The position numbers were made by a program, and so were the translations under genes. Of a DNA stretch of 64,000 nt, positions 13,801-64,000 are shown in pieces. The stretch spans positions 10,315,832 through 10,379,831 of the forward strand of contig OZ316897.1 in NCBI GenBank assembly GCA_973895155.1, given 5' to 3'. Source of the DNA: Marsupella aquatica (taxonomy: Eukaryota; Plantae; Marchantiophyta). The stretch's first letter is position 1. Each line of letters begins with the position of its first letter. The notes beneath the pieces were generated by a model. That model was not told the origin of the DNA, did no database searches, and worked only from the letters and a program-made list of their open reading frames with translations.

Positions 13801-15007
13801 GGAAATTGTTCCCCAAGTGTTTGAGTTAGATGTGCCAACAGGCGATTCTGTTAGCCAACGGGAGAGTGGTCTTAATGTAGAGCCCTCAGGAACTGAGGAA
13901 GTACAGGAAGCCGAGGATCAACCAGAAGAAGGCGAGATATCAATGGATGTCACTGCAAATGAAATAGTTCCCACATTCGAGTCGGGTAGAGATAACGTCG
14001 AGGTAGTTCTTGAGTTGGAGAAGCCTGCGGAAGTGAAGGAGGAAGCCACTGCTCCAGCTGCAGTGTCCGTAGGAGATGTGCCACCTGTAGAGACTCAGGA
14101 AGGCCAAGGAGGAGACATTGTTGTACATCCCACTGAGCTGAAGGTACCTGTCTCTGAGGTTGTCAGTAATGTGACAACACCTACCGATACCGGTGCCCAG
14201 GAGGAAAAAGAACCAGGGGAGTTACCACAAGTCGAAACTGGATCAATGGTCACTCGGAACGCCCTAAAAAATACTGGGGCCACTTCAAACACCACAATAC
14301 ACCTTGCTGAGAGAGCAAAAGAGCGAGCTGCACTTCGCCGTGTTGGCACTAACCCCCAATCCCCAGCAGCTAGGGGCCGTGGCCGAGCAGCTAGGGGCGG
14401 CAAGGTTTGACACATCCTTCCACGTTTAGCTGCTTCGCTCCAATATATCTGTTTCTAATATCTAGAGCCTCATTATTTGAAAACTCCACTCTGTGAAGTG
14501 AATGGGCATGAGTCACGTTGTATTATGCTACTGAGGTGTTTTGTAGTGACGTGTCCAGTGATGTTTTCATTGCGAAAAGAAATTCCCATTGAAAAGTCTG
14601 ACACTTCCCACGTAGTTAGTAACTCTAATATTGATGTTTTTCGAAAACTGTTTGTTACCTTCACAGAGAGCACCTGGAGCTTCAAGAGGAGGGCGTGTCA
14701 TCTCCACGGGAGTAAGAGGACGCGGACAAGCGGGTAATTCATATGGACGCAATTTGACTCCCAGTTGCAGCATATCCTGATGCATGATTTGAAGAATTTA
14801 TGTCTGGTTAAGTAAGCAGAGAATCGATTTCTTCTGTTTTAAGGAAAAAATTTCTGCTAAATTTCAGGTGGTACCCCAGCAGCATCGCCTGAAGCTGCAA
14901 GAACTGGAACACAGCAAGGTTCTGGAGCCCAGGGCCAAACAGAGCAGGGAGAAACAAATACAACGCCGAACCCCTATGAAACCCTACCACGGGAAGGCGA
15001 GGATTGA
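105..15007 (+). CDS. NUA: Nuclear pore anchor / TPR-Mlp1 family coiled-coil nucleoporin, multi-exon, 5'-partial (starts upstream of the window)
   Basis: Spliced GT-AG exons read GISGTALAAALLRDGWS|LSTMYSKYHEAVDAWRHERHERKNAQTVLDR|VLYEIERKAELILDER|AEHQRMIEAYRKMEAKL, later YKRIAEANEEALKQLE, WREAQQNYERQ, DLQNVIRYLRRSKET|AETEVSLLKQERLRLQ and EEFKSLQAQ|VREINLLRESNAQLREEN, matching remembered plant NUA/TPR motifs. Long low-complexity exons at ~11978-12537 and ~12653-14405. The last exon 14868-15007 ends in TGA. Confidence 0.93.
3601..3802. repeat. Intronic tandem duplication, ~102 bp x2
   Basis: ccatgacac..gagtctgaaaatcgggtatggctccga...atgcaactt occurs at 3601 and 3703 with a few mismatches. Confidence 0.9.
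10779..10813. repeat. (TA)n microsatellite in NUA intron
   Basis: Direct reading. Confidence 0.95.
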
Positions 15008-17632
15008 GGTGTTCACTTACGATTTCTTTTAGTTTACTGAGATCAATTTCTGGAAAGTGACAGTGCAGATGTCTCTGGGATCTGATAGCGGGCCGTGAAG
15101 GGAAGTCCAGAAGTTAGTAGTCTTGTCAATTTAGTAGCTGGCAAGTGCCATTGTACTCAACCTTTTGTTTCAGTTGATAGGAGGGGTTCATCTTGGAGAC
15201 TTTAATAGATCACATATCCATTACTGGGTGATGGATATTATTGTTGGTCAAGGCTTGGTTAGCTAGCCTGTTAGAGATCATCTTCATAAGTTTTGTATTC
15301 GGGGCATGCATGCTTGTAGGGAGTGGGGAACAGGTCATCTGTTTCGTGAAAGCGAATCTCTGACTGCAAATGTAGAGATTAAAGGTCAATGCAGCCAGTA
15401 GCCCTGGTTAGCAGTTTTGCAGGAACCGTGTTTGTGTAGTACAGGATTCGAAATGAGAGGTTCAATTTTGAGCGATCTGCCCCACTGCCAATGACACTCA
15501 CTGAGCTGGTGGCTATTTCAGCTTTAACTGAAATTGCAAAAAATCGTGATTGGTGGTGTATGGTGAACTAGCTTCAGTGACTTCGAAATCAATTAGCAAG
15601 TACACCGGGATGTCTCCCTGAACTGCCGGTCACCTGGCCCAATGAAGGAAATGTTACCAAAGTGACCCGATGAAGTAACACTGAACTGAATCCGTGTTAA
15701 TTGAGCAGTTTGAGGTATATCATTGTTGTTGAGTGAAGGTAGTCATTTGAGGCAATGATGTCGTTGAGCAAGAAAATGTAGTCAAGGGTGTTTCCAGGTG
15801 AGGTGTTTAGGTGAGGTAAGGAAGTGTAGGTAATGAGAGAAAATTAGCTGTTGTGGAGGCAGGGAAGTCAACCAGGCAATGAAGTCATTGAGGCAAGGAA
15901 TTGTTGCCAAGGAAAAGAAGTCCGTGAACAGCGAAAGTGCTGGTGCAGCTAAACATAGTGAACATTGGAAGCTTAATGCAAAATTAAATGCAACCAGAAG
16001 TGTTTGAAAGCATGTTCATAAGTCCATAGTGATGCACCCTTTTTTATTTTTAGGTGAGGGCCTAACCATATGCAACATGAAGCCCTACATGAAGTCTCAT
16101 GCCTTATTGATAGTGGCACTTGGCTCTGATGTAAAGGTGGACTCTACCCAACTTGAAAGGCAAGTCCCTAATCACACTTGGATGGAATATGTGGGATAAA
16201 TACAATGTTTCCAGCATGCATATTTGGTTTGGTTCGATACATATGCATTATTTGAAGGGAAGCAGCAAGGTTGATTATTATTACATCATAGTGTTGTGGT
16301 GATGGAAAGTGCTGTTGTTGCACAGAGGGATGTCCATGCACAAGTGTTACCTTTTTGGAAGTGTCGTGGTTGTATCCGTGTTGGCAATGTGCAAAAAGGA
16401 GAAATTAGAAGATTGTGCACCCAGACAGGATAATCATTGAAGAAGGCAAGGGTGTAAGCAGGGAGGAGGGTTGAAAGAGAATGCACATGTCAAAGGTGGG
16501 GAAGGGACCAGGAGTGAGGTAGGAAAATAGGGAGGAAATCAAATAAAACCCAAACATTAGGGAGCAACCAAGAGGCAAAGAAAAAACTCCACCACTGTAG
16601 TTTTTTAATTGCCCACCCTTCCCCAGCAAAAAGCCATTTAATTCCCCAGATTTCATCAGTTTCTTTTGTCGTGCGTATACACATCACTACACAACACACA
16701 TTGTTTCTCACACATTTTCAAGCATGGACACAATGACAAACATAAGAGGAAGGAATACAAGTAAAATGCATGTTCTCACATCCCGAAATCCCAAAATAAT
16801 GTTCATAGAGTCAAACAAGGATGATCCCCTCCTATGCTATCACACACATATGTCAAACCAAGTACACCGCATGCTTCAAGGAATCTGCATGACACACACA
16901 ACTCAGACAGCCAAACCATAGCCACTAGAACTTGTGCTTAAGGTTCAAAATCAAAAGATGGCGTTTTGAGCCACCACAAAGGGATAGCTATCCCTAACAC
17001 ATAAACCCTAAATGCTCAAATAGTACACATATGAAGACCCCAAACCTAGATGGCACTATGTACTATCATACGCTTATGTGGTGTGATGCTTCCCATCTTT
17101 CTCCCCCTCTCCTCCTCTTCATCTTTGGCATCTACATGGTATGGGGCTGTACCCTATTGTCCCATGGCCCCATTGCACATGTTCCAATGACCCACATGGC
17201 CTCCCATACACTCTTCCGGCTCTCAAAAGTTAACCTTCAATTTCTCCCTTGCTACCAATCAGAGTAGGATGTTCTTGGGCTGGTTAGAAACAGTTTGAAA
17301 CGATATTTCCAAGAATCTAGTATTGCCAACATTCATTACTAATTGAGAGAGCATAACTTCCAAATTTTAGTTTGTGCTCAGGAAGCCAATACATGTTCTC
17401 CTGTTCTTGTTACTTTTTAGTTTTAATAACAATGTATACACTGCAAAGTCAGTGTGTAATGCTCATAACATTCTTAAATTTTCATTACAATTCTTTCTTA
17501 TGTTTCACAAGCAATGTAAACTACTTTGTTAGTCCGATAACACAGAAAATTCAGAAAATAAATCATTAGCTTAGGATTGGGGGATGCCCAATTCCTTTTA
17601 TTTTGAGGGTGGGATGATGCTTAACTAAGCAA

Positions 17633-20714: not shown

Positions 20715-22204
20715 TCCTGCGGCACGTACTCACTGTTTGCATGCAGTCTCCAGGGAAATTTAATTAAAAAGAATGTAACAAAGGGAGCGGGGGACTGATA
20801 TGTACAAGAACTGTTCACCTGTGATTTGGCCGATGCTTAGTGCAACTCATTGGTTCACTTAGAATCTGCCATATGCTACATCCATGGCTGAGTTTCCAAA
20901 GGGCCCGTAGACAAATCATTTTTGGGCTGATGCTTTTGTGTATATTGGAGCTCAGCTCTATATGCGAGTTTCGATTTCGTTGTGGTCCGTTGTCATTGAC
21001 TGTATATTATAGAGCTGCGCTAGCAGCAGTGAGCGATTGGTTGTTGATTGTTCTCAAGGAAAAAAATTCACGTTGCAAATGTCTCACTGCAGATTCTGCT
21101 AAACGTAGAGCGAGTGTCTGTGTTGGATGTTCCCACCCGATCTCAAACTATTCGTATAACTGATAATTCAACATCCAAAACAGACTGATAATTGCTGTCC
21201 ATCCTCCCCTCTCCTGCATGTCTGATAAAGATCGCAATTCTCGGCACTGTTAATCAATCTTCACGTGTGCGCTACTCAACTGTTGTCTTAAGGCACTGTT
21301 AAGAGCTTTCCCTGGCACGGTGTAGCACGGCAGTTTAGATCAAACTGTTTTCTGTGCCAGATGTTTGAGAGGAGGCGGCGGCGTCATGACCGTGCCAGAC
21401 AGAAGCTTTGCTCCGGTGGATGGAGTATGTGTGGCGGGGAAAGCCAAATTAGGGGACAACTTTTACAGCTTGCCGGACGGGGAAGTCTGGCGGATTCTGC
21501 ACTCGTGTCTTTTAAAGGAGGATTGTCAAGGCTGAATTTTCCAGACCAATCGATCGAGCTAGTCTGTAGTTCTCGCTTCACATCGTGCTGTGTCTTCTCT
21601 CTCCAACTCCTTGCATTGCAAACTCTCGGTGAGAGGTTGCATTTATTCAGTGCTTCAATGCACTCTGCCTCAATTAAATGATAGTTAAGAGATCGCGATA
21701 GTACCTCCAGAGAGATAATTGGTCGATTTCCAGTGCCTGTTGCCTTTGAAGCGCTTTGGGAATAAAGCAATCCCTCCGCGACAATAAGAGGCGATCCAAT
21801 CCTCATAGTCCTAGTTCTTTCACTACACCTGTTATTTGCCTGAATCCGTATCGCTTCGGGAAGATTGAGATTCTTCGTACTGAGAAGGACATAATTGATC
21901 CATTCGACAGACAGGTGTGTAGTTCCTCTGGAACAGTTTCTCAGAAGCTTCTGAATGATCTTTACCTGGTACGATAACTTGGAGCATTGCATCCACAGTA
22001 AGGAGAAACGATTCTTGTTAAGGCCGCTGGCACGGTATCATTCGACAACTTTTGTGACATTTGGTATCAACTATCGCATCTCGATCAGGGAGCAGAATCG
22101 ATTCAGGACCAGCATAGACAGCGCATCGAGGGCAACTAAACAGCTACATTACTGTAGTCAGATTCGGTAATTTCGTGATCTTTTGCGGGCTTTGCATTTG
22201 CGCG

Positions 22205-23392
22205 ATGGCCGCCGTTCTCGGCCCGATGGACTCGCCTCTGTTCGAGCTGCGTAATTTCAAGGCGAACGAGTTTCTGTACAGAGAGAGGAACTCGAACAAA
22301 ATGAAACCCGCTAGAGGAAGTCCTCAGGACCGCTCGAGCTCGAGTCCCAGCTCTCGCCAAGGAACATCCGGCGAGAATCAAGTGGTAGTTTCCCCCTCGG
22401 GAAGAAAGGGCCGTAATTCTACAACTCAAACAGCTATTGTGGAGTCACTTCAAGTGAAGAGGGCAATTTCTACTACTGCTATTGCAGCTGGAGGAACTCC
22501 GACGTCAACGAATAACGACGGCTCTGTCCAATCTCGCGAGATTGACAGCAACCGATCTTCTACGCTACGGTCAAAATTATGCGGAGGAGAGGAGACCATT
22601 ATCACAACACCTGATTTCCGTTCGAACGATCTTGCACCTGTGCGGGCCCGACGTGAGATCCAAACGGACCCGGTCCCTAAATACGAAAGCAAGGCAAACG
22701 TCTTGCCGTCTCAGGATGAAGCGACGCTCAAAAAGCTAGTGAAGATTGTGGTCCGAGAAATACAAGGTGAGGAGAAGACAAAGGTGCCAATTCGCCTGGA
22801 CGACTTCACGGGGGAGAAGTCGCTCTATTTGGCAGAGGATGCCATCGTGTGGCTGAAGAAGCTGCGATTGGCAGCCCGGCAATACGAGTGGAGCCACGCT
22901 TTGGCGTTGGAGGTAGCATCCGTCCATCTCAAGGGATTAGCAGCTCGCTGGTTTGCTTCAATCGAAAAGCATCTAAACGAGGAGCTGCATTTGGACAAAG
23001 ATCGGTGGAATTATTTTGAGAGCCAGTTCGAGGAGCGGTTTGCGGACTTTCGGTCCCGTCTGCTCCAAGTCGAGAAGATTAAGGACTTGAAATTGGGACA
23101 TGGACAGGACGTCCGGGAGTACGCGGAGGCCATCATGAGCATGAACTGCAGGCTCGAGGAGCCGCTCGATGACGAGTTTCTCCGTTGGGTGTTCATTCAG
23201 GGGTTGCCTCCTTCCGAGCTCAGGGAAAAGTTGTTCAAGTTCGAGGAGAACCCCCACACCTTGGTCAGTGCTGTCAAATACGCCAGGAGGTTTCAGCTGT
23301 CCCAGTCCGTGTTCAACCTGAAGGACAACTCCACCCGCATCCCCAGAATGATCCCAGGATCTATGCCCGCTAGATCAGTTCGATCAAATTAA
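22205..23392 (+). CDS. Stand-alone Ty3/gypsy-type Gag capsid-domain protein (intronless ORF; first ATG 22205, alternative ATG 22301)
   Basis: The C-terminal half (PIRLDDFTGE..DAIVWLKKL..YEWS..HLKGLAARWF..WNYFESQFEERF..LKLGHGQDVREY..FIQGLP..TLVSAVKYARRFQ) has the retrotransposon gag capsid pattern. The N-terminus is S/T/R-rich. No zinc knuckle, protease or RT follows. Confidence 0.8.
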   Translation: MAAVLGPMDSPLFELRNFKANEFLYRERNSNKMKPARGSPQDRSSSSPSSRQGTSGENQVVVSPSGRKGRNSTTQTAIVESLQVKRAISTTAIAAGGTPTSTNNDGSVQSREIDSNRSSTLRSKLCGGEETIITTPDFRSNDLAPVRARREIQTDPVPKYESKANVLPSQDEATLKKLVKIVVREIQGEEKTKVPIRLDDFTGEKSLYLAEDAIVWLKKLRLAARQYEWSHALALEVASVHLKGLAARWFASIEKHLNEELHLDKDRWNYFESQFEERFADFRSRLLQVEKIKDLKLGHGQDVREYAEAIMSMNCRLEEPLDDEFLRWVFIQGLPPSELREKLFKFEENPHTLVSAVKYARRFQLSQSVFNLKDNSTRIPRMIPGSMPARSVRSN

Positions 23393-41821: not shown

Positions 41822-44800
41822 ATGGCAGTGATTCCGTTGGTGATGGTGGTTCTGCTGTCTGCACCATTCCTATTTTCCGCGGCGTCTTTGGAGCCCCAAC
41901 TTCTTACGTATCATGCTTCAAAGCTTCAAGCGGAGCAAGATTTTGCTGCAGCCGACGCAGCCTTTGTGAGTGCCTTGGGCGATCCGGGGATGAGGAGCGA
42001 CAGAGTCAGAGTGGCTGTTGAAGGCTGGAATTTCTGCAACCGAGCAGGAAACTTGAGTAGTCCCGTCCATTCAGAAAACGGGACTGATGGACAGGTGTCC
42101 ATAGGCAGCGGCAGCCCACGGTGGGCCGACTGCACCGATTTGGTCTGTCCAACAGACTCGTCTGGTGAGCCCCATCCTTCTCCTCCAGATTTTCGCAAAG
42201 ATGCGGAAAGCCTTAATCATTAAGTTTTGGAATCGGAATTTTCGAAGATAAGAAGATCTTCATTACAATGCCTCTAGCTAGCACACGTTTAAGAGGTGAT
42301 CCCTTGTAGAGAATTGCGGGCTGAATTTCTGTATTCCACTGAAATCCGTGTTTGTTAGTTTGTACACCATGAGCGTGGGGATCCCCTTGAGGGGAATATA
42401 TCTGGACTAAATTCTGTGTATCCTTTGGATTAGTATCAACGACTCCGAATTCTCTCTTCAGATATCTCTAAAAAAGACCGCTGGGATCCATCCACACATT
42501 CTAGTGTAATTTGTGCTTCGATCCAGCTTCGAATGAATGAATGAATGAATGTAGGCTTCAGTGCCACAGCAGGGTAGTCATCTGTTCTCCGCCACTTCGT
42601 GTGTATGTCTCCAAATCTCTCAGTCGCTTTCGGCAGTGCAGTTTTGCCACGTGAAAGATGGGACCACACTAGGAAGATCCAGTCAAGTCTCTCTTGCTCC
42701 GAACCCTTCATCCAAATTGCCTCAGAACCACCGATCAACAATAGTTGAGTTTCTCTGACCTTCACACTCCTGGTGGGACTCATTTCCGTCTCAACATTTT
42801 GTTTTTGAGCAATGGCGCAGTTTCTCAATTTCTCAATGAGGGTAGTGGCCCAAAAGTCCATCGAAGTGAGTTCCAAGTATGAGGATGAGAAATAGAAAGG
42901 GCCCAAAATCCAAATGCGAGCGTAATTCACATTGGCCATATCTCCTACGTTCAATCAACAAGATTGGACATCCTAGATCTATATGGCAACAGGCACGCAG
43001 GCTGAGTCTTTCATCTGTTTTTCGATCTCCCTTTGTCGAGATCGAAAACAACGCTCTGGTCCTGTGTTTTCAATGTCGAAATCGCTTTGTCGAATGACTT
43101 TTAAAAACTTTAATAATCAAAATCGCTTTGTCGAATGACTTTTAAAAACTTTAATAATCAAAATCACTTTCAGGGGCCTTATCCAAATATGAAAATAGCA
43201 GAATTTGTAACTTTCGCGTTCTAGAAAGTTTGAAGGACTTCCAAACAGGCATGCAGTTTCATAAGGTAGAAATGTTTCTTAAACGCCACTGATTGTAATA
43301 TCAGACAATCTCGTTTCCAACCTCTTGTCATTAGGACAAAGGTTGAGTACGCAATATGGGCCTCGAAGGGAAGAGTCATGGGTAAACGTTGGACATTAGT
43401 GCAGGCATGTTTCTCGCTTTCGTTGATTAGCCGTCTGTTTGGAATTTGCGTTTGGAAGGCCGAGAATTAGACCTGCCAGATTCTTTCATTTTAGCTTTGA
43501 TCTGGTGTAACCAGGAATGTTCTCATTAAATCTCTGCTTCTTTTTGCGACAGTTGTAGACACTTGCACAGCAGTCAATAGAGTTTCACAGTCGGACAACA
43601 GCTTGAGGCCGGGGGATGCATTTCCATGTGGCGATTTTACGGCTTACAACGACGCAGACTTGTTCGCCATCGAGAAAGAGAAATTCTTAGGATCACTGTG
43701 TGCTGTTGGTGACTCATCTGACCCATGGAACTTCTGGATGGTCATGCTCAAGAATGGGAATTATGATGAGAACAGTGGACTCTGTCCCTTGGCTGTGCAG
43801 AAGAATTCGTCTTCCTCTCAGATAGATAGTGCTCTGAAGCGCTTCCAGCAGCCTCCTTCTCAGACTGCAACTGGGTTGCTGAATGGGCAAACCAAAAGCG
43901 GGTTCCCCTGTTTTGGCACTGGTTGTATGAACCAACCACAGGTGTTCATCAATTATTCGCAGCCGCAGGGGAGTCTAGGGCTCGCTGGTGGGATTTATGG
44001 AACGTATGACTTGGACGAGGCTGGTGCTCTTGGCAGCTCCAATTCGTCATTCTTCTCTGTCAAATGGTATAAGAACGAACGTGGAGGCAGCTGGTTTTTC
44101 CACCATGTGCTAACCACCAGCATGAAGTATCCTTGGCTCATGCTTTACCTCAGGGCAGATGCTACTTCTGGGGAGTCTGGTGGATACCCCTGGGATACAC
44201 GAGGCATGATGCAGAAGGTAAAATAGTTCTGTCTGTTTGCCTTTCTCCACGGGACATGTCCCACAGTGGAAGCTCTTGCATTTGGCATCCGAAACACGGA
44301 TTCACCTATCAGTTATTGTCGAATGTGTTGATGTTTGGGCCACTTAAAGGGCCTTTTTTTCTAAATCCCCGCTACTTTCCTTATCATAGTAGTAGATACA
44401 CGTCAATAGTATATCATATACCACTTCATATTTTATGATTCTAAAGAATGTTCATTATTATTATTATGAAAAGTTGAGGATGCATCTGAGAGTGTGGCGA
44501 TAGGCAGGGCTCTACAACTTTAGTCTGCACTCAGTACAATCCCTACGTTTGTAAACTGATACCAAACAAATCCACCTGGGCCATAAGCATCAGCCATTAG
44601 TCCTCAAGAACCTGCAGTGTCGAAACACCACAGGAAGCTGATGCAAGTCCGATAAGTATTATGGATCTTGGCTCCGTTGGGTGCTTTGAGAACTAATGAT
44701 ATAGACTTCTTTATCTTAGACCATTTGCACTTTTCTTCAGGTGCCACAATCGCCCAATTTCACAGTGCAGTTCACATTGAACGTGCTGAAGGGAGGGGGT

Positions 44801-53696: not shown

Positions 53697-53838
53697 CATT
53701 TCGTGTGGACTTTCACTGACTCGACAGGAGCAGTCAAACGCAGAAGGACCACCTGTTGTGAGTAGCCATTTCGTGTGGACTTTCACTGACTCGACAGGAG
53801 CAGTCAAACGCAGAAGGACCACCTGTTGTGAGTAGCCA
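53697..53838. repeat. 70 bp perfect tandem duplication
   Basis: catttcgtgtggactttcactgactcg...gagtagc at 53697 and 53767. Confidence 0.92.
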
Positions 53839-55058: not shown

Positions 55059-56938
55059 TGTACGTCAATTTTGTCATGCCGAGGGACACTGCCTCTTATG
55101 CACATCGGCATGTCCCTCGCCTGCCCGCTAGGTATGTAGTTAGGGCTAGTGTACTACTTGAGTTAGCGACATGTTCTTGTAGCAAGTCTGGGCCGTTCTT
55201 GAAGCAAATGTGCTTGTTAGTGTGACGCCAGGACTTTGCTTGCTTAGGGCATGTCTTTCTTTGTGGGTTTTCAGTTCTTCTCGAATCGCTGTTGACAGAG
55301 CTCAGACAGTGCTCATCAGTTCCGTACACGGGATTCACACAGTGATTCGTTAGATGCTCCCGGCCGATCTTGGCATCCTGCCGGTTTTCGATTCGATTTC
55401 AGTACAATTGTTTCTCTTATGCCTTTTATTCGAGAAGAACTGCCGAGTGAAGGGAAGAAGATCAGAAACGTTGTGCTTCTCAGCTGCTCATGCCGGTCTA
55501 GACAATTTCCGTCGAAGCCGGTACAATTTCTTTGCAGAAAAATCAAGCGATGGGGTTAGAGTTAGATTTTTCCTTGTATACACTTAAACTCTCGGACTGG
55601 CGGAGTACACCCAGGAGGAGACGAGGGGAGCGCTTCCGGGAGGTTTTGCGTTTTGCCCAGGTTTTTCTTTTCCGGCCGCAACCTGCGTCACGACCTACTG
55701 CCGTGACCTTCGTCGGCGACTTGCTGCCGACTGCACAGGGCGCTGTGCTCTTGCTGGAGTTTTTAACGACCCTTTGAAGCCCCTTTTTCGTTGGTTTTAT
55801 GGCCATTTCCCGGCCACGGCTGCCATCCTGCATCGGCTGCCGTGCGACAACCTCCGGACTGCCTCGTCCACCGCGCAACTGCTTCTCGACACATAGGGCC
55901 GCGCGCCCGTTTTCTTTTCGCCCTTATTTTTTGTTGCCATTTTTTGCCTTCGTCGCCTCGCCACTCCTTTCGCTTTGGTGTGCAGACTGTGCATAGGGCA
56001 TCGTGCCCCTTGCCTTGCACATTTCCTTCCTTCTTTTTCCCTACCGTTATCAGCAATCAAAGCAGCTGGGGGAAAGCGAGCGCATGGAGAGGGCACGAGG
56101 CCCTATGGAGAATAAAGAGGGGGAGGGGGAGTAATCATTTGACTCTCTCTCTCTTGGGAGTCCCCCCCTGCAGGGCACAAGCATTAAGGAAGGAGGGGGA
56201 AGCGAAAGGAGGGCACCAAGCCCTAGGGAGCATTAAGTGGGGAGGAGGAGCCCTGCCAGAAGCAAAGCGAGGGAGAGGGCACAAGGCCCAACAGGAATCA
56301 TTAAGGAGGGGAGAGGGAGCTCGTAGCTTCTCTTTGGGAGTTCATAAAGGGGGGCACGAAGCCCTATGGAGGGTTGGGGAGCCATTAAGAGGGGCTCATT
56401 TCTTTCTGTTCCCCCTTGCCTTAATTTTGCATCAGTTTTTCTTTGGCACTTACCCTGCCTCGCCTCGCCCTTTCTTTGTCTTTCGGGCTGGATTCTTTCC
56501 TTTCGCCTTGCTGCGCCTCGCCTTGCTCGACAGCATAGAGCCGCGCGCCATTTTTATTGTTGTGTATAGGTCGCTTGCCTATACACATTCGGCCGGTCCA
56601 CCTTAAACCCGATGTGTATACACTTAGGGGCAGGCCCGTTTTTCTCGTATTTCTTTTCCTTTCGCCTCCCTTGCTTTCCATTCCGAATGGCTGCACTTTC
56701 TGGGTCCACAATGGGGCCCGATGTGTATAGATTTTAGGGGCCCTCCTTTCCGCCGACCTCAGATCATCTGCATACCGCTGCGGGTCCTGTGTCTACACAT
56801 CAGACGGTCAATTTGGTATATAATAGGCAAATGCGAAGGGGACTGAATTTGCGCTTTTAAGGGTCATTTTCTCCAACGGTTTTTCTTTGTAACGGTTTTT
56901 ATGTGTGTTCACACATTTTGTACATTTGGCACCCCGGG
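55059..56938 (+). repeat. Candidate 5' LTR (TGTAC...GTACA, 55059-56924) and PBS-like TGGCACCCCGGG (56927-56938)
   Basis: A TG..CA pair with a 5-bp inverted repeat brackets the CpG-rich block; TGG follows 2 nt after CA, just before the gag ATG. The second LTR is not in the window, so this is unverified. Confidence 0.3.
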
Positions 56939-56950
56939 TTAGCATGCAGC

Positions 56951-59900
56951 ATGTCAGCAGACGAGCCGGGAGGTAGCAGCTCATCGCCACCAACGCCCAG
57001 GTACCACTTACGGAGTGATCCACGACCGTTGGTGCCCATTTCATTGGAGTCTCGGCAATTTTGACGATGTCAGCAGACATCAGCAGCACCCACACCACGC
57101 AACCCTTCTGCTACATTTGGCGGTCGCTTCACCACTACCCCGAAGCCTACTATTGCTTCTTTGCCCTTTACTCCTTCTGCATCAGTGATTGTTCCAGCTT
57201 CACCGACATACAGCATGGATGCCAGTCACTCATCTGGCCGCATTGAGCGCTTCAGTGGGCGGCCAGGCATTGTTTCTTTGCGTGAGTTCAAATCCACTTT
57301 CTACACTGTCGTTTACGAATTGGAGTTGAAGTATGGCAGCAATTTCACAAATGCTTTTGCATTTAAGCAGCTAGCCAGGTATGTGCACCATGAGGCTTTG
57401 GATGTGTATGAGCAGCACTCTCACCGGCTGCTTGCTATCACACAATTGCCTAACCCTGCCTATGCCACTGCAATTGCGGCTGCCTCACAGCTGGCATTAC
57501 AGAATGCCATTGCAGCCCATGCTGCTGCTCCTGCCACTTCCCCTCCTACTCCAGTTCCCACCACTGCACCAGTTACTCCCACTGTCTTGGCACAGGCTAC
57601 ATCAGGCATTTCTCCCACCATTGATTCCCCTGCCTTTGTTGATCCAATGGCTGAGTTTTTCCAGGTTCTTGAATTGAAATTCCCAATCAAGAGTGCTGAC
57701 AAAATCATGCAGTTGGCCACCTTTGTGAGGCAGCGCGATGAAACCTTGAAGATGATGTATCGTCGGCTTCTCAAGCTAAAAAAGGACACCCAGAGCATCA
57801 TTGACCTGGAAGCTGCTCATCGCTATCTTCGCGCATTGGAGGGCACACCAGCTCTCCATTCGCAAGTGTTGCAGCAAGTATTCTCAGAGTTCGGAGATAG
57901 CTACACCCTGCTCAATGTCTATGACACTGCTGAGAAACTTGAGTTGGCCCATGCACGTTATGAGGCCAGTATTGCGCGTCCACCGCGATCCAGGTACCAG
58001 GCTGCTACCCCTACACTGGCCACTCCTTCCCGTGTGCCACAGTATGGTTCCAAGACCAAGCCAGCCCATGCTGCTTTCATGCTGCCATCTTGCAACTACT
58101 GTGGTAACCCCAATCACAAGGCTAATGACTGTGATATTGTTGCTGAGGACCTGTCTTGTGATTTTTGCGGAAAAGTGGGTCACTTGGAGGCAGTTTGTTT
58201 TGCCAAATTCCCAGAGAGGAAGCAGCTACGACAGCAGGCCCCTCCTCCTGCTCCTGCTTCCACTCCCCCACCAGCTAGGAGGGCTCCTACTGCATCAACT
58301 GCTCCTCCTTCCAGTGGCAAAGCATCCAGTGCCAACAAACCGCCCAAGCAGCAACAGAAGCAACCAGCTCAGAAGGAGGCTCACAACGCACAGGCAACTC
58401 AACTCCAGTCTCTGACTCATGAGGTTGAGTCCCTACGTGCCCAACTTGCCAACATCAAAGACAAGTTAACTGCCTCTGCTGGTCCTTCTCAACCGGCTGG
58501 TCACGTGCAACCCATCCCTAGCCCAGGCACCACTGACAGTTCAGCACCTCTACCCCACTCTTTCTATGGCTTGCCATTTGATGCTCATATGGGTGAGTGT
58601 GTGTTGTCCTCTGCTCCACAGCCTGGCCTTACAGCAGAATTTTCAGATTCATTCTGCCCTTCCTATTTTGCTTACCAGCAGGCCAGTGCTGCCTCCCATA
58701 TTGCTCCCACACGCCGCATTGTACAGGCTGATGGTCTTGCTACCGGTCCTATGACTAGAGCCAGGGGAGCTAGGGCTATCATGCCCCAATCTTTTCAGCC
58801 ACTCACACTTGCTGAAGAGCGCACCTTGTTGGCGAGGGGGGAGGGAGCTGCAGCTACATCCATTCCACCACCAGGTGCTGCTGACATTTCACAGGGAGTT
58901 GTTTCTCCTGAGCTGCTTGAGCATTTCACCTCCGGTATGGCACAAAGGATTCTTACAACTCCACTTTTCAGTTGCCATGATTTACAGCTGGATGCTAGAG
59001 CTGTCCTCAGGGCGCTAGAGGGTTCACTGCATTCTTCATCAGCCCCTGTGACACCGGTTTTGGAGGTCCAATCTCATGTACATACTGGACCTTCTTCTTC
59101 TCCTTTACATGTTTCCACTGGTTTGGCTGCCCCAGTACCGATTGTTGCTGATTGTGTGACCAGAGCTACACTTGATTCTGGTCATGCTGCTCCATCTTTC
59201 CTGGCTATGTTGTTGAGTGGAAAGACCGTGGACACTAACTCCCTTCACAAGGTACCTCATCATTTGCCGAGAGTGGTGCCTAGTGACAGGACTTCAGTTT
59301 CCACCACCATTGCCATTGTTGACAACAGGAATTCAGTGGTCAAGTTGGAGGGTCACACTCCTCAGGTGGTCATGCTAGACACAGGTGCTCAACCAGTGAT
59401 ATTGGGCATTCAGTTTGCCAAGAAGATGGGACTGTTGACTGATCATTTACAGCAATCCAAGTGGCACATTCGGACTGCTAGTGGCACTGTGGAGGATGTG
59501 CTGGGTGAGAGTTCTACTTTACTCACTCTCACTTTTAATGGAGGTACAGATCAGGAACTGCATTTCCCAGTCAGATGTTTGGTTACCAATGCCACTACGT
59601 ATGATGTGCTCATTGGCTAGGAGGCTTTGTTCCCACCAGGTTTTACCATTGACAACTGGCATGAGCATGCATACTACAGAGTTGATTGGCATACTGATGG
59701 CTCACACTTGGGCTACATTCCACTTGATTTGCATGGTGCCCATACACCTATGGCTCACCATTGTGTGTTGAAAGCAGTGCACACAGCTACCTATGTCAAC
59801 CACCCATTGCAAGATTGGATTGAGGAGGATGACGATGAGGTGGCTGCTGCACATGCTGCTGCACGTATAGCAGCACTTTCCAGCAACGTGGATCATCAAC

Positions 59901-62900
59901 CAGAGGTGGTACAACGGCTCCAAGCAGCCCATGGACCTTTGGTGGCTGCATTGCGCAAGTTTGAAGACCTTGGGCAGCACAATGGACAGCCAATAGCCCC
60001 AATCTTGAGCGCACCAGTTACATGGACTCCTGCTCCAGATGGCCTTACATTGCTTGAGCTTTTTGGTGGCATCTCTATAGGCCTGGAAGCTCTCCTACAA
60101 TCTGGCATGGTGGTGAAGCAGTACATCTATGTGGATATTGATCCAGGTGCAAGGCAAGTGGCTGAATCCCGTCTGCTGGAATTTTCAGAGCGATTTCCTC
60201 AGCAGTTTCCACACAGTGCATGGAAGTCTGCATTTTCTTTCTTTCCTTCAAATATCCAGCTTGTCCAGCACCGGCACTTAACCCTTCTTGGCTCCCTTGA
60301 TTTGATCATAGCTGGTTGGGAATGCCAAGGGTTTTCAGCTGCTGGTCACGGTGCTGGACTGCATGATTCTCGTTCTGGCCTTTTCACAGCATTGGTTCAG
60401 ATTCTCACCTGGGCTCAATCCCTTTATCCTGCTGTTGGTTATATCATTGAGAATACTCCATCTCAATTTGACCAGCGACCACAGGTCAAAGAGGATTTCA
60501 GTGTGGTCCAGCACTACTTGGGACCACCCCTTCTCATTGATGCAGTGCACTGTGGTTCTTATGCACATCATTTTCGTAACTTTTGGACTAACCTTGCACC
60601 ACCTTCCTTGTTGGAGTTAGCTCTTCACCACACATCCAGGGACACTAACCTCATAATGGACCAGATTTTGGATCCTGACAGTTCTTGCCAACCAGTTACA
60701 TGGCAAGAGCCAGCACCTTGGTATCTAGCCAATACCATTGGATAGCCCCGTGCTGCTTGGCCTACATTTGTGTCCTTTCCAGGTGCACATGCTTTTCAGG
60801 GTGATGGTCCTGGCCTGGTTTACCGACATTCTACCGGTACATGGGATGAACCTAGTCCTGAGGAGAGAGAACGGGCTATGGGCTTCCAATCCAGTACTAC
60901 AGGTCACACCCAGATCACCAGGCTGGCCAGGAATGCTTTACTTGGCAGGGTAATGGATCTTAATGCTCTCACTTGGCTTCTGGTCACTTGCATCCTTTTT
61001 CAGATGTACATTCATCCAACATCTGGAGTTCCAGCTCTACCACTCCATGGTGCTGCTACATGGCATCCCGACCAGGTGCACTTACCTCTATTCAACACTC
61101 ACCACTTCAGTCCAAGTGTTGGGGGGGAGGAGGTCCCTTGTAATGTGGCTGATATTATTTCTGAGTTTCATGGTGTGGACCAACCCAGATCAGCAGGTAC
61201 AACAGGCCTTGGAGAGGCCTCGTCACCTTATCAGCAGCATGCTAGCAGCTTGGACAGTGGAGAGGCTAGCACTTCTGGCTCTTCAAGTACGAGTACATCA
61301 GGTCCTATTCCTAGTGTTGCCAACTACACATTCATCATGGGCAACCACCTGAGTAAAAGACAGAAGGACCAGCTGCTGAATTTGCTCCTCAAGCATGAGA
61401 ATGTGTTTGCTTTCTCTATGAAGGACTTGGGTAAGTGCAAGACTATGCAGTTCTCCATTGAGTTGGCTGATGAAACACCTATCTTCAGGCGGAGACACCG
61501 TTTGAGTAAGCATGAGTGGCAGTTGGTGGATGAGAGGTGCCAAGAGTTATATGAAGCTGGTCTTATTCAGCCATCTACATCAGATTTTGCAGCAGCTACA
61601 GTGATGCCAGCAAAGAAGGATTCCAGTGGATTGTGGACAGAGAAGCGCATGTGTGGGGACTACAGGCCACTGAACCTGGTCACACCCCAGGACAGGTACC
61701 CCATGCCACGGCCAGAGGAGCTATTTGACAGCATTGGAGACTCAGACATCTTCACTCTTGTGGATCTAAGGCAAGGCTTTAACCAGATTTTGCTGCTTGC
61801 AAAGGACCGCAAGAAAACAGCTTTCCATGGCAGTAACCAACTATGGGAGTGGTTGGTGATGCCATTTGGCTTGAAGAATGCGCCCATATTCTTTCAAAGA
61901 GTCATGGACCAGGTTCTTCAAGGTGCTTAGTTTCTGAAATGCTACATTGATGATGTGTTGGTCCACAGCAAAGGATTTGACCAGCATCTACTTGACCTTG
62001 AGGAGCTATTCTTGAGGCTTAAGAAGGTGAACCTAAAGATACACCCCAAGAAGTGTGAATTTGCTGTCAGATCAGTAGTATACCTTGGGCACCGCATTCT
62101 TCCAAATGGAACCATGGCTCACTGGGCCAAGGTGGTATCCATCTTGGAAATGCCCACTCCTACCGATGTTCACACTTTGAGGAGTTTTATTGGGTTGTGC
62201 AATTACTACCGGATCTACATCAAAGATTTCAGTACCATTGCACACCCATTGTATGCTTTGTTGAAAAAGAATGTGACTTGGACATGGAGTACAGATGCTG
62301 AGGCAGCATTTGCCACTTTGAAGGAGAAGCTCTCAGAATACCCGGTGCTGAGAAGACCTGATTTCAGCAAGGTCTTTGTGCTACACACAGATTGGAGTGC
62401 CCTTGGGATTGGTGCCATTCTGGGCCAGCATGATGAGGAAGGTAAAGAGTACGTCATTGCCTATGCATCCAGGAGCAACAATCAGGCAGAGAGTCATTAT
62501 TCTTCTTATGAAGGTGAATGCCTTGTTGTTGTGTGGGCTATCATACATTATAGGCCCTACCTCTATGGGACCAGGTTTGTTCTCTACACCGACCACCAGC
62601 CCTTGAAGTGGTTGATGACCAACGACAAGCTTACTGGCAAGCTTGCTCGTTGGGCGCTCATACTCCAGGAGTATGATTTTGAGGTAATTCATAGGCTTGG
62701 TGTGACACATCAGAATGCTGACACTATGTCCCGCAGCCCTTTGATTACCTCTGATGATTCCTTAGATGCACGGCAAGATTTTGACCAGGCTTCCATCCTG
62801 CCTACATTTCATGCATCGACCTATCTTGCTTTGCTGCCATGCTATGTTGTTGACCAACCTGTGGTGGACATATGGGAGGATAGCGACACTCTAAGATTTT

Positions 62901-63096
62901 TACAGCATGGGGAGTACCCCACACATGTTACTGCTGCCCAGAGAGACAGAATTCAGCAAAGGTCCAAGCGCTACTTGTGGAAGGGAGATCATCTCGTGCG
63001 TTGCTTGCCAGACAGGGAAGTGGTGGTTCCACCTATTCATGAGAGGGTTGGCCTTATCCGCAAGGTACATTCTGAGCTTGGTCATTTTGGTGTTAA
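56951..63096 (+). pseudogene. gag-pol polyprotein in a single frame with four premature stops (TGA 57062, TAG 59618, TAG 60743, TAG 61928)
   Basis: ORFs 57161, 59627, 60770 and 61955 share one frame, which extends back to ATG 56951 (MSADEPGG..RYHLRS). Zinc knuckles CNYCGNPNHKANDC and CDFCGKVGHLEAVC at 58091-58198; protease MLDTGA at 59372-59389; RT KRMCGDYRPLN, DLRQGFNQI, VMPFGLKNAP and YIDD (61943-61954); RNase H LHTDWS..YTDHQPL; integrase start KVHSELGHFGV. Confidence 0.92.
60041..60985 (+). other. DNMT3-like cytosine-5 DNA methyltransferase domain inside pol
   Basis: C5-MTase motifs in canonical order: I LLELFGGISIG, II YVDID, IV DLIIAGWECQGFS (Cys 60323-60325), VI YIIENT, VIII LIDAVHCGSYAHHFRNFWTNL, IX EERERAMGF, X ITRLARNALLGRVM. 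Confidence 0.88.
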
Positions 63097-64000
63097 TGTT
63101 GGGTATTTACTCTTACGTCTAGGTTAGGTATGACGTGGTTGGTACAACAACGTGGGTTGGTACAACTACGTGGTTAGGTACAACTACGTGATTAGGTACA
63201 ACTATGTGGTCAGGTACAACTACGTGATTAGGTACAACTATGTGGTTAGGTACAACTACGTGATTAGGTACAACTATGTGGTTAGGTACAACTAAGTTGC
63301 ACACTATATCATAAGAGGCATGTGTGCTTGGAGAGGTAGAACCAAGGCTCATTGTTATGGAGCCACTTGAGAGATAGGGAGAGCTTACACTGTGGAGACT
63401 CGGTATAGCCGACGGGCTTAGAGTTCAGTAAAGCTCTCTTGTGTGTTCCCGTGGACGTAGCCTCAAGGAGGTGAACCACGTATCTCTTGTGTCGACTATT
63501 GTGCGTTGGATGGTTCATGGGCTTGCCGTTGCGATCGTCGTCTATGCTCAACAATTGGTATCAGAGCATGCTTGGGAGGTGACGTGTGTTCGTGACGGGA
63601 TTTCATGACGGTTTTTCCAGCGTTGAGTGTTGGTGGATTTTCCAGAGTTCCATCGCATGGAACTTGGAGTTTATGGGCTCAACGGATAGATCAGGGCAAG
63701 AGCTTTCTAACGGTGTGAAGAAATCGTTGAACGGAGCTCGTGGTGCAGAGAGATCTAAGTTTTCGTCGTTCTGGATTTTGTGAAGAAAGTTGGCAATCGA
63801 CTCGGAGGGAGAAGCGTCAAGTGTTTTGACTCAACGGAGAGATTGAGGCAAGACGATTGTTTTTGAGTCCGGGATTGGCTCTTTGATGCAAAGAGGAAGG
63901 CTAAGCAAAATCAATTACCTTGTTGGACTTGGTGACGGCACCAAGTGCAATTGATCAACATTCGTTGTTGACAAGGTACCATTTTTTTCTCTTTGAAAAA
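63097..64000 (+). mobile_element. Nested LTR retrotransposon, 5' end: LTR 63097-63553, PBS 63556-63567; continues beyond the window
   Basis: TGTTG...CAACA termini, followed after 2 nt by TGGTATCAGAGC (complement of the tRNA-iMet 3' end). Starts exactly where the integrase frame breaks. Superfamily cannot be determined (no coding sequence visible). Confidence 0.9.
63122..63293. repeat. 18 bp tandem repeat (~9-10 copies) within the nested LTR
   Basis: g(g/a)ttaggtacaacta(c/t)gt repeated head-to-tail. Confidence 0.93.

What the first reader, a model, noticed from the sequence alone, without database searches (positions are those of the whole stretch)
56951..63096. Ty3/gypsy retrotransposon carrying its own DNMT3-like cytosine methyltransferase between protease and RT
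Seen: a ~315-codon C5-MTase domain (60041-60985) with motifs I, II, IV, VI, VIII, IX and X in order, in the same frame as gag, protease, RT, RNase H and integrase, with no frameshift. Motifs VIII-X (LIDA..SYAHHFRNFWTNL; ERERAMGF; ITRLARNALLGR) resemble DNMT3 (MIDA..SAAHRARYFWGNL; EMERVFGF; MSRLARQRLLGR, recalled from memory), without the permuted motif order of DRM. Established: DNMT-carrying retrotransposons have been described in Symbiodinium dinoflagellates and the charophyte Klebsormidium, so the architecture itself has precedent; I do not know of it being characterised in a land plant. Inference: the enzyme would be processed from the polyprotein and packaged in the particle, where it could methylate new cDNA (self-marking, mimicry of host chromatin or copy-number control) or alter host methylation.
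Basis: partly seen in the sequence, partly recalled or inferred. Interest (0 to 1): 0.93.

Follow-up and report, generated by a model that had tools for sequence, protein, structure and literature searches.

The report
Dead bryophyte Gypsy retrotransposon carrying DNMT3
This is a recently dead copy of a very abundant jumping gene whose single long protein includes its own DNMT3-type DNA-methylating enzyme; the kind was described in 2018 from a freshwater alga, and this copy belongs to a branch that also lives in land plants (a leafy liverwort and peat mosses).

Summary
Window 56951-63096 is one reading frame encoding gag, protease, a C5 cytosine methyltransferase, RT, RNase H and the start of integrase. 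There is no frameshift, but there are four in-frame stops.

The methyltransferase passes Pfam's threshold. A family profile matches DNMT3A best (E 3e-21), and a confident model of a close relative matches only DNMT3A/B/C among the top 49 structures.

It is not a one-off capture. Thousands of sibling contigs cover the segment. The closest named relatives are from Calypogeia fissa (70% identity), Sphagnum and Closterium. dN/dS against relatives is about 0.08-0.16, with dS saturated.

This copy is dead. Besides the stops, an Arg kept in 111 of 112 relatives is His here, and another LTR element splits the integrase at 63097.

The protease-MTase-RT order marks a streptophyte branch, separated by one strongly supported branch from a chlorophyte branch with RT-RNaseH-MTase-integrase-PHD. 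Glu replaces the usual Pro before the catalytic Cys across much of the family.

The kind is known (KnitGypsy-Dnmt3, 2018), so this is a new member. This scan has already noted the same family about two dozen times elsewhere in this genome. What the enzyme does is untested.

The parts
55060..56950 (+). Probable 5' non-coding region of the element. It is CpG-rich (o/e about 0.8-1.0, except a dip to about 0.3-0.46 at 56000-56600). The 5' boundary is approximate.
   Evidence: Composition and CpG switch near 55060. No ORF homology and no second copy in the window. The boundary is inferred, not shown.
56951..59338 (+). gag region, with a CCHC zinc knuckle at about 58088-58135 and a Pro/Ala/Ser-rich linker
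   Evidence: zf-CCHC is weak (17.5 bits). Gag homology to type B relatives.
57062..57064 (+). In-frame stop 1 (gag N-terminus)
59339..59557 (+). Aspartic protease (DTG active site)
   Evidence: PF13975 E 7.8e-6, PF13650 E 5.9e-5.
59618..59620 (+). In-frame stop 2. It is private to this copy.
   Evidence: In one search every sibling contig laid there differs from the window within this codon.
60041..60985 (+). DNMT3-like C5 cytosine methyltransferase domain. Motifs I, IV (GWEC), VI (ENT), VIII, IX and X are in canonical order.
   Evidence: The copy keeps 38 of the 41 family columns that are at least 90% conserved.
60569..60571 (+). Motif VIII: His where 111 of 112 relatives have the first Arg of R-x-R. 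This is a copy-specific loss.
   Evidence: The Calypogeia relative P0233 has RLR.
60743..60745 (+). In-frame stop 3, inside the target-recognition region between motifs VIII and IX
61637..62098 (+). Reverse transcriptase (YIDD), interrupted by stop 4
   Evidence: RVT_1 5e-13 and 1.3e-5 on the two pieces.
61928..61930 (+). In-frame stop 4 (in RT). It is private to this copy.
   Evidence: In one search every sibling contig laid there differs within this codon.
62285..62674 (+). RNase H
   Evidence: RT_RNaseH 1.3e-37, RT_RNaseH_2 6e-32.
63030..63096 (+). First residues of the integrase zinc-binding (H-H-C-C) domain. The frame breaks off here.
   Evidence: Homology to the integrase N-termini of relatives (INTz).
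63097..64000 (+). A nested, unrelated LTR retrotransposon that splits the integrase. LTR 63097-63553 (TG...CA) holds a 9-copy 18-bp array at 63133-63294. The primer-binding site TGGTATCAGAGC is at 63556-63567. The element runs off the window.
   Evidence: Reading the PBS as tRNA-iMet-type rests on my own knowledge of plant LTR elements.

Best explanation
The stretch is a dead but young copy of a very high-copy Ty3/Gypsy LTR retrotransposon family in a bryophyte genome, probably a leafy liverwort. Its single gag-pol reading frame carries a DNMT3-type C5 cytosine methyltransferase between protease and RT. It belongs to the streptophyte branch of a large green-plant lineage of DNMT3-bearing Gypsy elements, the kind published as KnitGypsy-Dnmt3. 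Shown here: the domain is a genuine, non-permuted, DNMT3-like C5-MTase; it is a family-wide part of the element; it has been under purifying selection; and this copy cannot make it (four stops, a lost catalytic-motif Arg, and an integrase split by a nested element). Inferred: in live copies the enzyme is translated within the polyprotein, freed by the element's protease and carried with the replication machinery, where it methylates the element's own new DNA at or around integration. That would be self-marking that tempers expression or copy number, or that imitates host methylation. The strong CpG depletion of the coding body fits long-term CG methylation of the family, but does not say which enzyme did it.
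For: Architecture and Pfam domains.
DNMT3 affinity: single-sequence PDB search puts DNMT3A first. The family profile gives DNMT3A E 3.3e-21 (79 bits), then DNMT3C, DNMT3B, NtDRM (52 bits), HhaI (40), with DNMT1 absent, in three collinear segments. The AF2 model of clade member P0024 has pLDDT 95.5, and its top 49 Foldseek hits are all DNMT3A/B/C, at E 3e-20 to 7e-17 with query TM-scores 0.61-0.71.
Family-wide presence: 1619 representatives at E<1e-3 and 151 at E<1e-30, many inside polyproteins of 1500-3400 aa. Intact type B polyproteins show the same order, e.g. P0188 (2358 aa) and P0176 (2318 aa). Contigs laid on the element number 6937 and 3789 in two runs and cover all 30 bins, the MTase bins included; 2380 of the 6937 are at least 99% identical.
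Selection: pN 0.18-0.28 against pS 0.68-0.76. The catalytic Cys is present in 112 of 112 relatives, the motif VI Glu in 112 of 112, and each Arg of R-x-R in 111 of 112.
Host range: Calypogeia fissa at 70% identity, five Sphagnum species, and Closterium. The window groups with Calypogeia at 100/100 support.
Death of this copy.
CpG o/e is 0.16-0.25 in the coding body, against about 0.8-1.0 over most of the 5' region (0.46 at 56100-56600), and 0.59 in the rest of the window.
Published activity of related retrotransposon DNMT3s on CG: PMC5890265.
Against: No activity data exist for this branch. The published Klebsormidium enzyme gave no methylation in yeast, which the authors called inconclusive. 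The usual Pro before the catalytic Cys is Glu here and in 63 of 112 relatives, and ENV is ENT, so the chemistry may differ. No RNA run holding the element was listed, so expression is unknown. Protease cleavage sites, packaging and the timing of methylation are pure inference. I could not compare directly with Klebsormidium sequences. The host's name is hidden from me and rests on the nearest named relative.
Confidence: 0.85

Rival explanations
1. The MTase domain is, family-wide, a catalytically altered or dead module kept for another job such as DNA or chromatin binding, targeting of integration, or a scaffold in the particle. It would not be an active cytosine methyltransferase.
For: Glu replaces the near-universal Pro of the Pro-Cys catalytic dipeptide in 63 of 112 relatives and in all 6 close bryophyte-clade relatives where the motif was found. 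ENT replaces ENV in 59 of 112. KnitGypsy-Dnmt3 showed no activity in yeast.
Against: Every other catalytic or cofactor position is kept: Cys 112/112, motif VI Glu 112/112, both Arg 111/112, and the motif I glycines. Pro and Glu interchange at least 14 times on the tree, which fits tolerated variation in a working site. dN/dS is low. The authors called the yeast result inconclusive, because human DNMT3B also failed.
Confidence: 0.12
2. The enzyme acts mainly on host DNA rather than on the element's own cDNA. It might mark target regions or perturb host silencing, working together with the C-terminal PHD finger seen in relatives.
For: Intact relatives of both architectures end in a PHD finger after the integrase. 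That is a histone-reading module like those that guide DNMT3.
Against: The window's C-terminus lies outside the window, so a PHD is not shown for this copy. Nothing here bears on the target. The published K. nitens methylome is not unusual.
Confidence: 0.1
3. A one-off capture of a host DNMT3 fragment by this single copy, or a chance read-through of a host gene next to a transposon.
For: None beyond the general possibility.
Against: Sibling contigs cover the segment at the same level as gag and RT. The same order sits in single intact ORFs of unrelated samples. The MTase tree follows the architecture. dN/dS is below 0.2.
Confidence: 0.01

Closest known systems
KnitGypsy-Dnmt3 of Klebsormidium nitens (de Mendoza et al. 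2018, Nat Commun 9:1341, PMC5890265)
   Same: A Ty3/Gypsy element with a non-permuted, intron-less DNMT3-related domain inside the Pol polyprotein. The host is a streptophyte. Ka/Ks is below 0.2. The unusual A-coding-B-A-B repeat layout is seen here in type B relatives L023 and L028.
   Different: The host is a land plant (nearest named relative Calypogeia fissa, also Sphagnum). The family here is very high-copy, whereas K. nitens is reported to have fewer copies than Symbiodinium. I could not read the published domain order and retrieved no Klebsormidium-named protein, so whether protease-MTase-RT is the published order is open. The Glu-Cys/ENT active-site variant is not mentioned in the paper's text or supplementary legends.
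Chlorophyte Gypsy elements with RT-RNaseH-MTase-(G-patch)-integrase-PHD (named hits: Haematococcus lacustris, Monoraphidium neglectum, Chromochloris zofingiensis)
   Same: The same MTase family (35-45% identity, E 1e-40 to 1e-50), the same Gypsy RT, RNase H and integrase, and the same Glu/Pro variation at motif IV.
   Different: The MTase sits after RNase H, not before RT. The two layouts are separated by one branch in the MTase tree (UFboot 100, SH-aLRT 98).
SymbioDIRS-Dnmt3 and SymbioLINE-Dnmt of Symbiodinium (same paper)
   Same: Retrotransposon-borne C5-MTases. SymbioDIRS-Dnmt3 is DNMT3-related and methylates CG de novo in yeast.
   Different: DIRS and LINE backbones with a tyrosine recombinase or an endonuclease. 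The authors regard them as independent acquisitions, and the hosts are dinoflagellates.
Host DNMT3A/3B/3C (animals) and plant DNMT3/DRM
   Same: The catalytic fold and motif order of DNMT3, including the short region between motifs VIII and IX. The closest solved structures are all DNMT3.
   Different: No PWWP or ADD reader domains next to the catalytic domain. It is embedded in a transposon polyprotein. Glu stands for Pro at motif IV. It lacks the permuted motif order of DRM.

Membership tests
C5 cytosine DNA methyltransferase (Pfam PF00145) | Significant match to the family model | tested here: met
   E 2.4e-6, 27.6 bits against a gathering score of 22. The feature search gives only PF00145 clusters.
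C5 cytosine DNA methyltransferase (Pfam PF00145) | Motifs I, IV, VI, VIII, IX and X in canonical order | tested here: met
   Three collinear segments align to DNMT3A.
C5 cytosine DNA methyltransferase (Pfam PF00145) | Complete catalytic set in this copy (Pro-Cys, ENV Glu, R-x-R) and an open frame | tested here: not met
   Cys and Glu are present. The Pro is Glu, which is family-wide. The first Arg is His in this copy only (111/112 relatives have Arg). There is a stop at 60743-45.
DNMT3 family | Closer to DNMT3 than to other C5-MTase families by sequence profile | tested here: met
   DNMT3A 79 bits, 3C 71, 3B 70, NtDRM 52, HhaI 40, AtDRM2 37, DNMT2 19. DNMT1 is not found at E<=0.01.
DNMT3 family | DNMT3 catalytic-domain fold | tested here: met
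   Tested on the clade relative P0024, not on the broken window copy. pLDDT is 95.5. The top 49 Foldseek hits are all DNMT3A/B/C, at E 3e-20 to 7e-17.
DNMT3 family | Placement inside the DNMT3 clade in a tree with DNMT1, CMT, DRM, DNMT2/4/5/6 and bacterial references | not tested
   No reference set was available by id. The 2018 paper places the Klebsormidium element's DNMT in a divergent Dnmt3-related clade.
DNMT3 family | Chromatin-reader domains (PWWP, ADD) N-terminal to the catalytic domain | tested here: not met
   No Pfam domain lies between protease and MTase. Relatives instead have a PHD finger after the integrase.
Gypsy-DNMT3 retrotransposons (KnitGypsy-Dnmt3 kind) | Ty3/Gypsy RT, RNase H and integrase with the DNMT in the same polyprotein frame | tested here: met
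   Only the first integrase residues lie in the window.
Gypsy-DNMT3 retrotransposons (KnitGypsy-Dnmt3 kind) | [quoted passage not shown] | tested here: met
   dN/dS 0.08-0.16 against six relatives. dS is saturated, so the ratio is rough.
Gypsy-DNMT3 retrotransposons (KnitGypsy-Dnmt3 kind) | Split direct repeats in the order A-coding-B-A-B | tested here: inconclusive
   The 3' end lies outside the window. The layout is present in relatives L023 and L028.
Gypsy-DNMT3 retrotransposons (KnitGypsy-Dnmt3 kind) | Direct sequence kinship with the Klebsormidium elements | not tested
Gypsy-DNMT3 retrotransposons (KnitGypsy-Dnmt3 kind) | DNA methyltransferase activity | not testable with these tools
   Needs expression and bisulfite or enzymatic methyl-sequencing.

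The most novel reading that the evidence does not exclude
The Glu-Cys / E-N-T active site is fixed in the bryophyte clade and kept under purifying selection. It could mark an enzyme with altered chemistry or substrate, for example one that methylates single-stranded or RNA:DNA-hybrid reverse-transcription intermediates inside the particle. The element would then write its own epigenetic mark before integration. The whole lineage would then be an ancient green-plant invention, predating the chlorophyte-streptophyte split, in which the MTase moved once within pol.
Probability: 0.1. Interest if true: 0.85.

Novelty: new member of a known kind. Interest (0 to 1): 0.5.

Why it matters
Transposons are normally the victims of DNA methylation, so a transposon that carries its own DNMT3 is a paradox whose purpose is still unknown. 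The only plant-lineage case in print is an alga with few copies. This work shows that the same kind is abundant and recently active in a liverwort-type land plant and has relics in peat mosses. It also comes in two domain orders that track the two great branches of green plants. That gives many natural intact enzymes and hosts in which to ask what a transposon-borne methyltransferase does. The conserved Glu-for-Pro change next to the catalytic cysteine is a concrete enzymological question.

Tried and rejected
- Host identification failed by direct means. Run and organism names are coded. The protein Atlas gave nothing usable for a host exon. Cluster look-ups carried no organism names. A paper search for assembly GCA_025491035 found nothing. 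The host is inferred only from the nearest named relative.
I could not fetch DNA of the intact type B polyproteins, such as P0154.
- The earlier notes' claim of intact relatives in Marchantia was not confirmed. No Marchantia-named protein appeared. Absence from those lists proves nothing.
- The association between Glu/Pro at motif IV and Thr/Val at motif VI is visible in raw counts (E-T 39, P-V 20, E-V 9, P-T 5). Only 3 independent contrasts lie on supported branches, so it is not significant.
- Metagenome relatives were of little use as live comparators. All but one (L005) of the 38 carry 1-13 stops in the MTase.
- No second copy or solo repeat of the element lies in the window, so the 5' boundary could not be fixed by comparison.
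- I did not read the frame through its stops in any search tool; the pieces were searched apart.
- One-off capture was rejected.
Full report
**1. The observation**

Window 56951-63096 translates in a single frame into a gag-pol polyprotein. It holds gag with a CCHC knuckle, an aspartic protease (VMLDTGAQ), a domain of about 315 residues with C5-methyltransferase motifs, RT (YIDD), RNase H and the first zinc-binding residues of an integrase. There is no frameshift. There are four in-frame stops, at 57062-64, 59618-20, 60743-45 and 61928-30.

The tools take no read-through here, so I searched the pieces apart. Pfam gives:
- PF00145 DNA_methylase at E 2.4e-6, 27.6 bits, above the gathering score of 22.
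- RVT_1 at 5e-13.
- RT_RNaseH at 1.3e-37.
- gag-asp_proteas at 7.8e-6 (26.8 bits, just below its 28.2 cut-off).

The part of the methyltransferase behind the stop at 60743 (motifs IX and X) is collinear with the first part in 120 relatives, 10-50 residues downstream.

**2. State of this copy**

The frame ends at 63096 because another LTR retrotransposon is inserted there.
- Its LTR runs 63097-63553 (TG...CA) and holds a nine-copy 18-bp array.
- A TGGTATCAGAGC primer-binding site follows at 63556-67.
- That element runs off the window.

The integrase core and anything after it cannot be seen.

Within the methyltransferase the copy keeps 38 of the 41 columns that are at least 90% conserved in 112 relatives. 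One of the three deviations is His in place of the first Arg of the motif VIII R-x-R, which is Arg in 111 of 112 relatives. Together with the stops, this means the copy cannot make the enzyme.

It died recently. Contigs of four public runs were laid on 57161-63096. Of 6937 pieces from one run, 2380 are at least 99% identical and 2776 are 95-99% identical. At two of the stop codons (59618-20 and 61928-30) every sibling contig differs from the window within that codon, so those stops are private to this copy. Differences from siblings are mostly transitions.

**3. The domain is a family-wide part of the element**

The laid contigs cover all 30 bins, the methyltransferase bins at the same order of depth as gag and RT.

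A HMMER search of 1.84 billion representatives with the first MTase piece found 1619 proteins at E<1e-3 and 151 at E<1e-30. Many are polyproteins of 1500-3400 residues. Intact single ORFs with exactly the window's order exist, for example:
- P0176 (2318 aa): CCHC, protease, MTase, RT, RNase H, integrase.
- P0188 (2358 aa): the same order plus a C-terminal PHD finger.

Nei-Gojobori comparison of the window's MTase codons with six metagenome relatives gives pN 0.18-0.28 against pS 0.68-0.76. That is dN/dS of roughly 0.08-0.16 with saturated dS. This rejects a one-off capture and rejects neutral evolution over the long term.

**4. It is DNMT3-like**

- The single sequence finds DNMT3A first among solved structures, weakly (E 0.004).
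- A profile of 35 family members (A1) finds DNMT3A at E 3.3e-21 (79 bits), DNMT3C at 71, DNMT3B at 70, tobacco DRM at 52, M.HhaI at 40, Arabidopsis DRM2 at 37 and DNMT2 at 19. DNMT1 does not appear at E<=0.01. The match is in three collinear segments (motif I; IV-VIII; IX-X), so the order is not permuted as in DRM.
- An AlphaFold model of P0024, an intact 325-residue member of the window's clade, has mean pLDDT 95.5. Its first 49 Foldseek matches in the PDB are all DNMT3A, 3B or 3C, at E 3e-20 to 7e-17 with query TM-scores 0.61-0.71.

I did not build a tree with reference DNMT families, so formal clade membership is untested here.

**5. Who carries it**

Searching with the window's own piece, the best named protein is from the leafy liverwort Calypogeia fissa. 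It is P0233, with 70% identity over the whole query, in protease-MTase order, on a 66.6-Mb sequence. Next come five Sphagnum species at 54-68% and Closterium at 39%.

In a careful tree the window groups with Calypogeia and three metagenome proteins at 100/100 support. The host's name is hidden from me, since run and organism labels are coded. The evidence fits a leafy liverwort, as earlier notes of this scan say.

A scan of JGI metagenomes gave 38 loci with 50-72% identity. All but one carry 1-13 stops within the MTase. In those samples the family is a relic, whereas in the window's genome it is abundant and young.

**6. Two architectures**

Most long relatives have the methyltransferase after RNase H: RT-RNaseH-MTase-(G-patch)-integrase-PHD, here called type A. 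The window and a minority have gag-protease-MTase-RT-RNaseH-integrase, type B.
- All named type A proteins are chlorophytes: Haematococcus lacustris, Monoraphidium neglectum and Chromochloris zofingiensis.
- All named type B proteins are streptophytes: two Closterium strains, Sphagnum and Calypogeia.

In the MTase tree the two types are separated by one branch. SH-aLRT is 99 in the 97-row quick tree. UFboot/SH-aLRT is 100/98 in the 43-row careful tree, and the label needs a single change in all 200 bootstrap trees examined. The trees are unrooted, so they show one change of position, not its direction.

The text of the 2018 paper does not give the domain order of the Klebsormidium element. No Klebsormidium-named protein turned up. 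Whether type B is the published layout remains open.

Two type B relatives show the A-coding-B-A-B split repeats that the paper reports.

**7. Active-site variation**

The window has GWEC, ENT and H-F-R where textbook C5-MTases have x-P-C, ENV and R-x-R.
- The His is private to this copy (section 2).
- The Glu is not. The residue before the invariant Cys is Glu in 63 of 112 relatives and Pro in 40. It is Glu in all six close bryophyte-clade relatives in which the motif was found.
- The third residue of motif VI is Thr in 59, Val in 36 and Ala in 12.
- On the 97-row tree Glu/Pro needs at least 14 changes. Glu goes with Thr and Pro with Val in raw counts (39 and 20 against 9 and 5). Only three independent contrasts lie on supported branches, so the link is not established.

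All other catalytic and cofactor positions are kept. I read this as a tolerated or adaptive variant of a working site. I give 0.12 to the rival that the domain is not an active methyltransferase.

**8. CpG pattern**

CpG o/e is 0.16-0.25 across the coding body (57900-62400). It is about 0.8-1.0 over most of the 5' region 55060-56950, dipping to about 0.3-0.46 at 56000-56600, and 0.59 in the rest of the window. The copy is nearly identical to many siblings, so the depletion is probably a property of the family, not of this copy's decay. Type A relatives from other organisms are much less depleted, at 0.44-0.86. This fits long-term CG methylation of the body, with the 5' region spared or constrained. 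It does not show which enzyme is responsible.

**9. Mechanism**

Shown: the element encodes, in frame and under selection, a DNMT3-type catalytic domain.

Inferred:
- It is made as part of the polyprotein and released by the protease.
- It acts on the element's own newly made DNA.

The 2018 paper proposed this reasoning and supported it only for the Symbiodinium DIRS enzymes, which methylate CG de novo in yeast. The Klebsormidium enzyme was inactive there, which the authors called inconclusive. No RNA run holding the element was listed.

**10. Novelty**

The kind is known (PMC5890265). A 2026 preprint already writes 'streptophytes (Gypsy-DNMT3)'. My searches found no paper describing it in a land plant. 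The 2018 survey did not include a liverwort.

I file it as a new member of a known kind. Three additions are worth recording:
- its presence and recent activity in a land plant;
- the two domain orders that follow the chlorophyte/streptophyte divide;
- the Glu-Cys site.

This scan has noted the same family about two dozen times on other pieces of this genome. My own tests agree with those notes on liverwort and peat-moss hosts. I could not confirm their statement about Marchantia.

**11. Limits**

- Breaks were read as X in scripts only.

Noticed in passing
window 63097-64000: A second, unrelated LTR retrotransposon is nested in the integrase. Its 457-bp LTR (TG...CA) holds nine copies of an 18-bp unit (63133-63294). 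A TGGTATCAGAGC primer-binding site follows at 63556-67. The element is CpG-rich (o/e 0.8-1.0), so it is probably young.
   Followed up: partly
window 55060-62400: There is a sharp CpG contrast inside the element. Most of the 5' non-coding region has o/e about 0.8-1.0 (dipping to about 0.3-0.46 at 56000-56600), and the coding body has 0.16-0.25. Type A relatives elsewhere have 0.44-0.86.
   Followed up: partly
window 60332-60343 (motif IV) and 60452-60460 (motif VI); alignment of 112 relatives: Glu replaces the Pro of the catalytic Pro-Cys in 63 of 112 relatives and flips at least 14 times on the tree. It tends to go with ENT rather than ENV, but independent contrasts are too few to test this.
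   Followed up: yes
P0391, P0210, P0133 (type A) against P0189, P0190, P0411, P0233 (type B): The same MTase sits after RNase H in named chlorophyte elements and before RT in named streptophyte elements. One strongly supported branch separates the two in the MTase tree.
   Followed up: yes
L006-L042 (JGI metagenome contigs): All but one (L005) of the 38 metagenome relatives carry 1-13 stops within the 247-codon MTase match. They look like old relics. Their decayed Arg codons read as Cys, Trp, Gln or His, as expected from deamination of methylated CpG.
   Followed up: partly
L028 5659-5942 / 14295-14920; L023 6921-7031 / 14316-15443: Type B relatives show split direct repeats in the order A-genes-B-A-B, the layout reported for KnitGypsy-Dnmt3 and discussed in earlier notes of this scan.
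   Followed up: partly
runs X7-X10: Four air-metagenome runs hold 13-15% of the element's sampled words, and 3971 contigs of one of them lie on it at 85% identity or more. This is presumably airborne bryophyte spores or fragments.
   Followed up: no
window 22175-23392 (+): An intact 405-codon ORF with a Retrotrans_gag domain (E 2e-9) and no pol beside it in the same frame. Another first-stage note covers it.
   Followed up: no
window 43603-44223 (+): An exon-like ORF with a strong DUF7705 match (E 1.5e-63), probably part of a host gene.
   Followed up: no
window 53697-53836: A perfect 70-bp tandem duplication lies in a CpG-poor repeat-rich stretch just upstream of the element.
   Followed up: no
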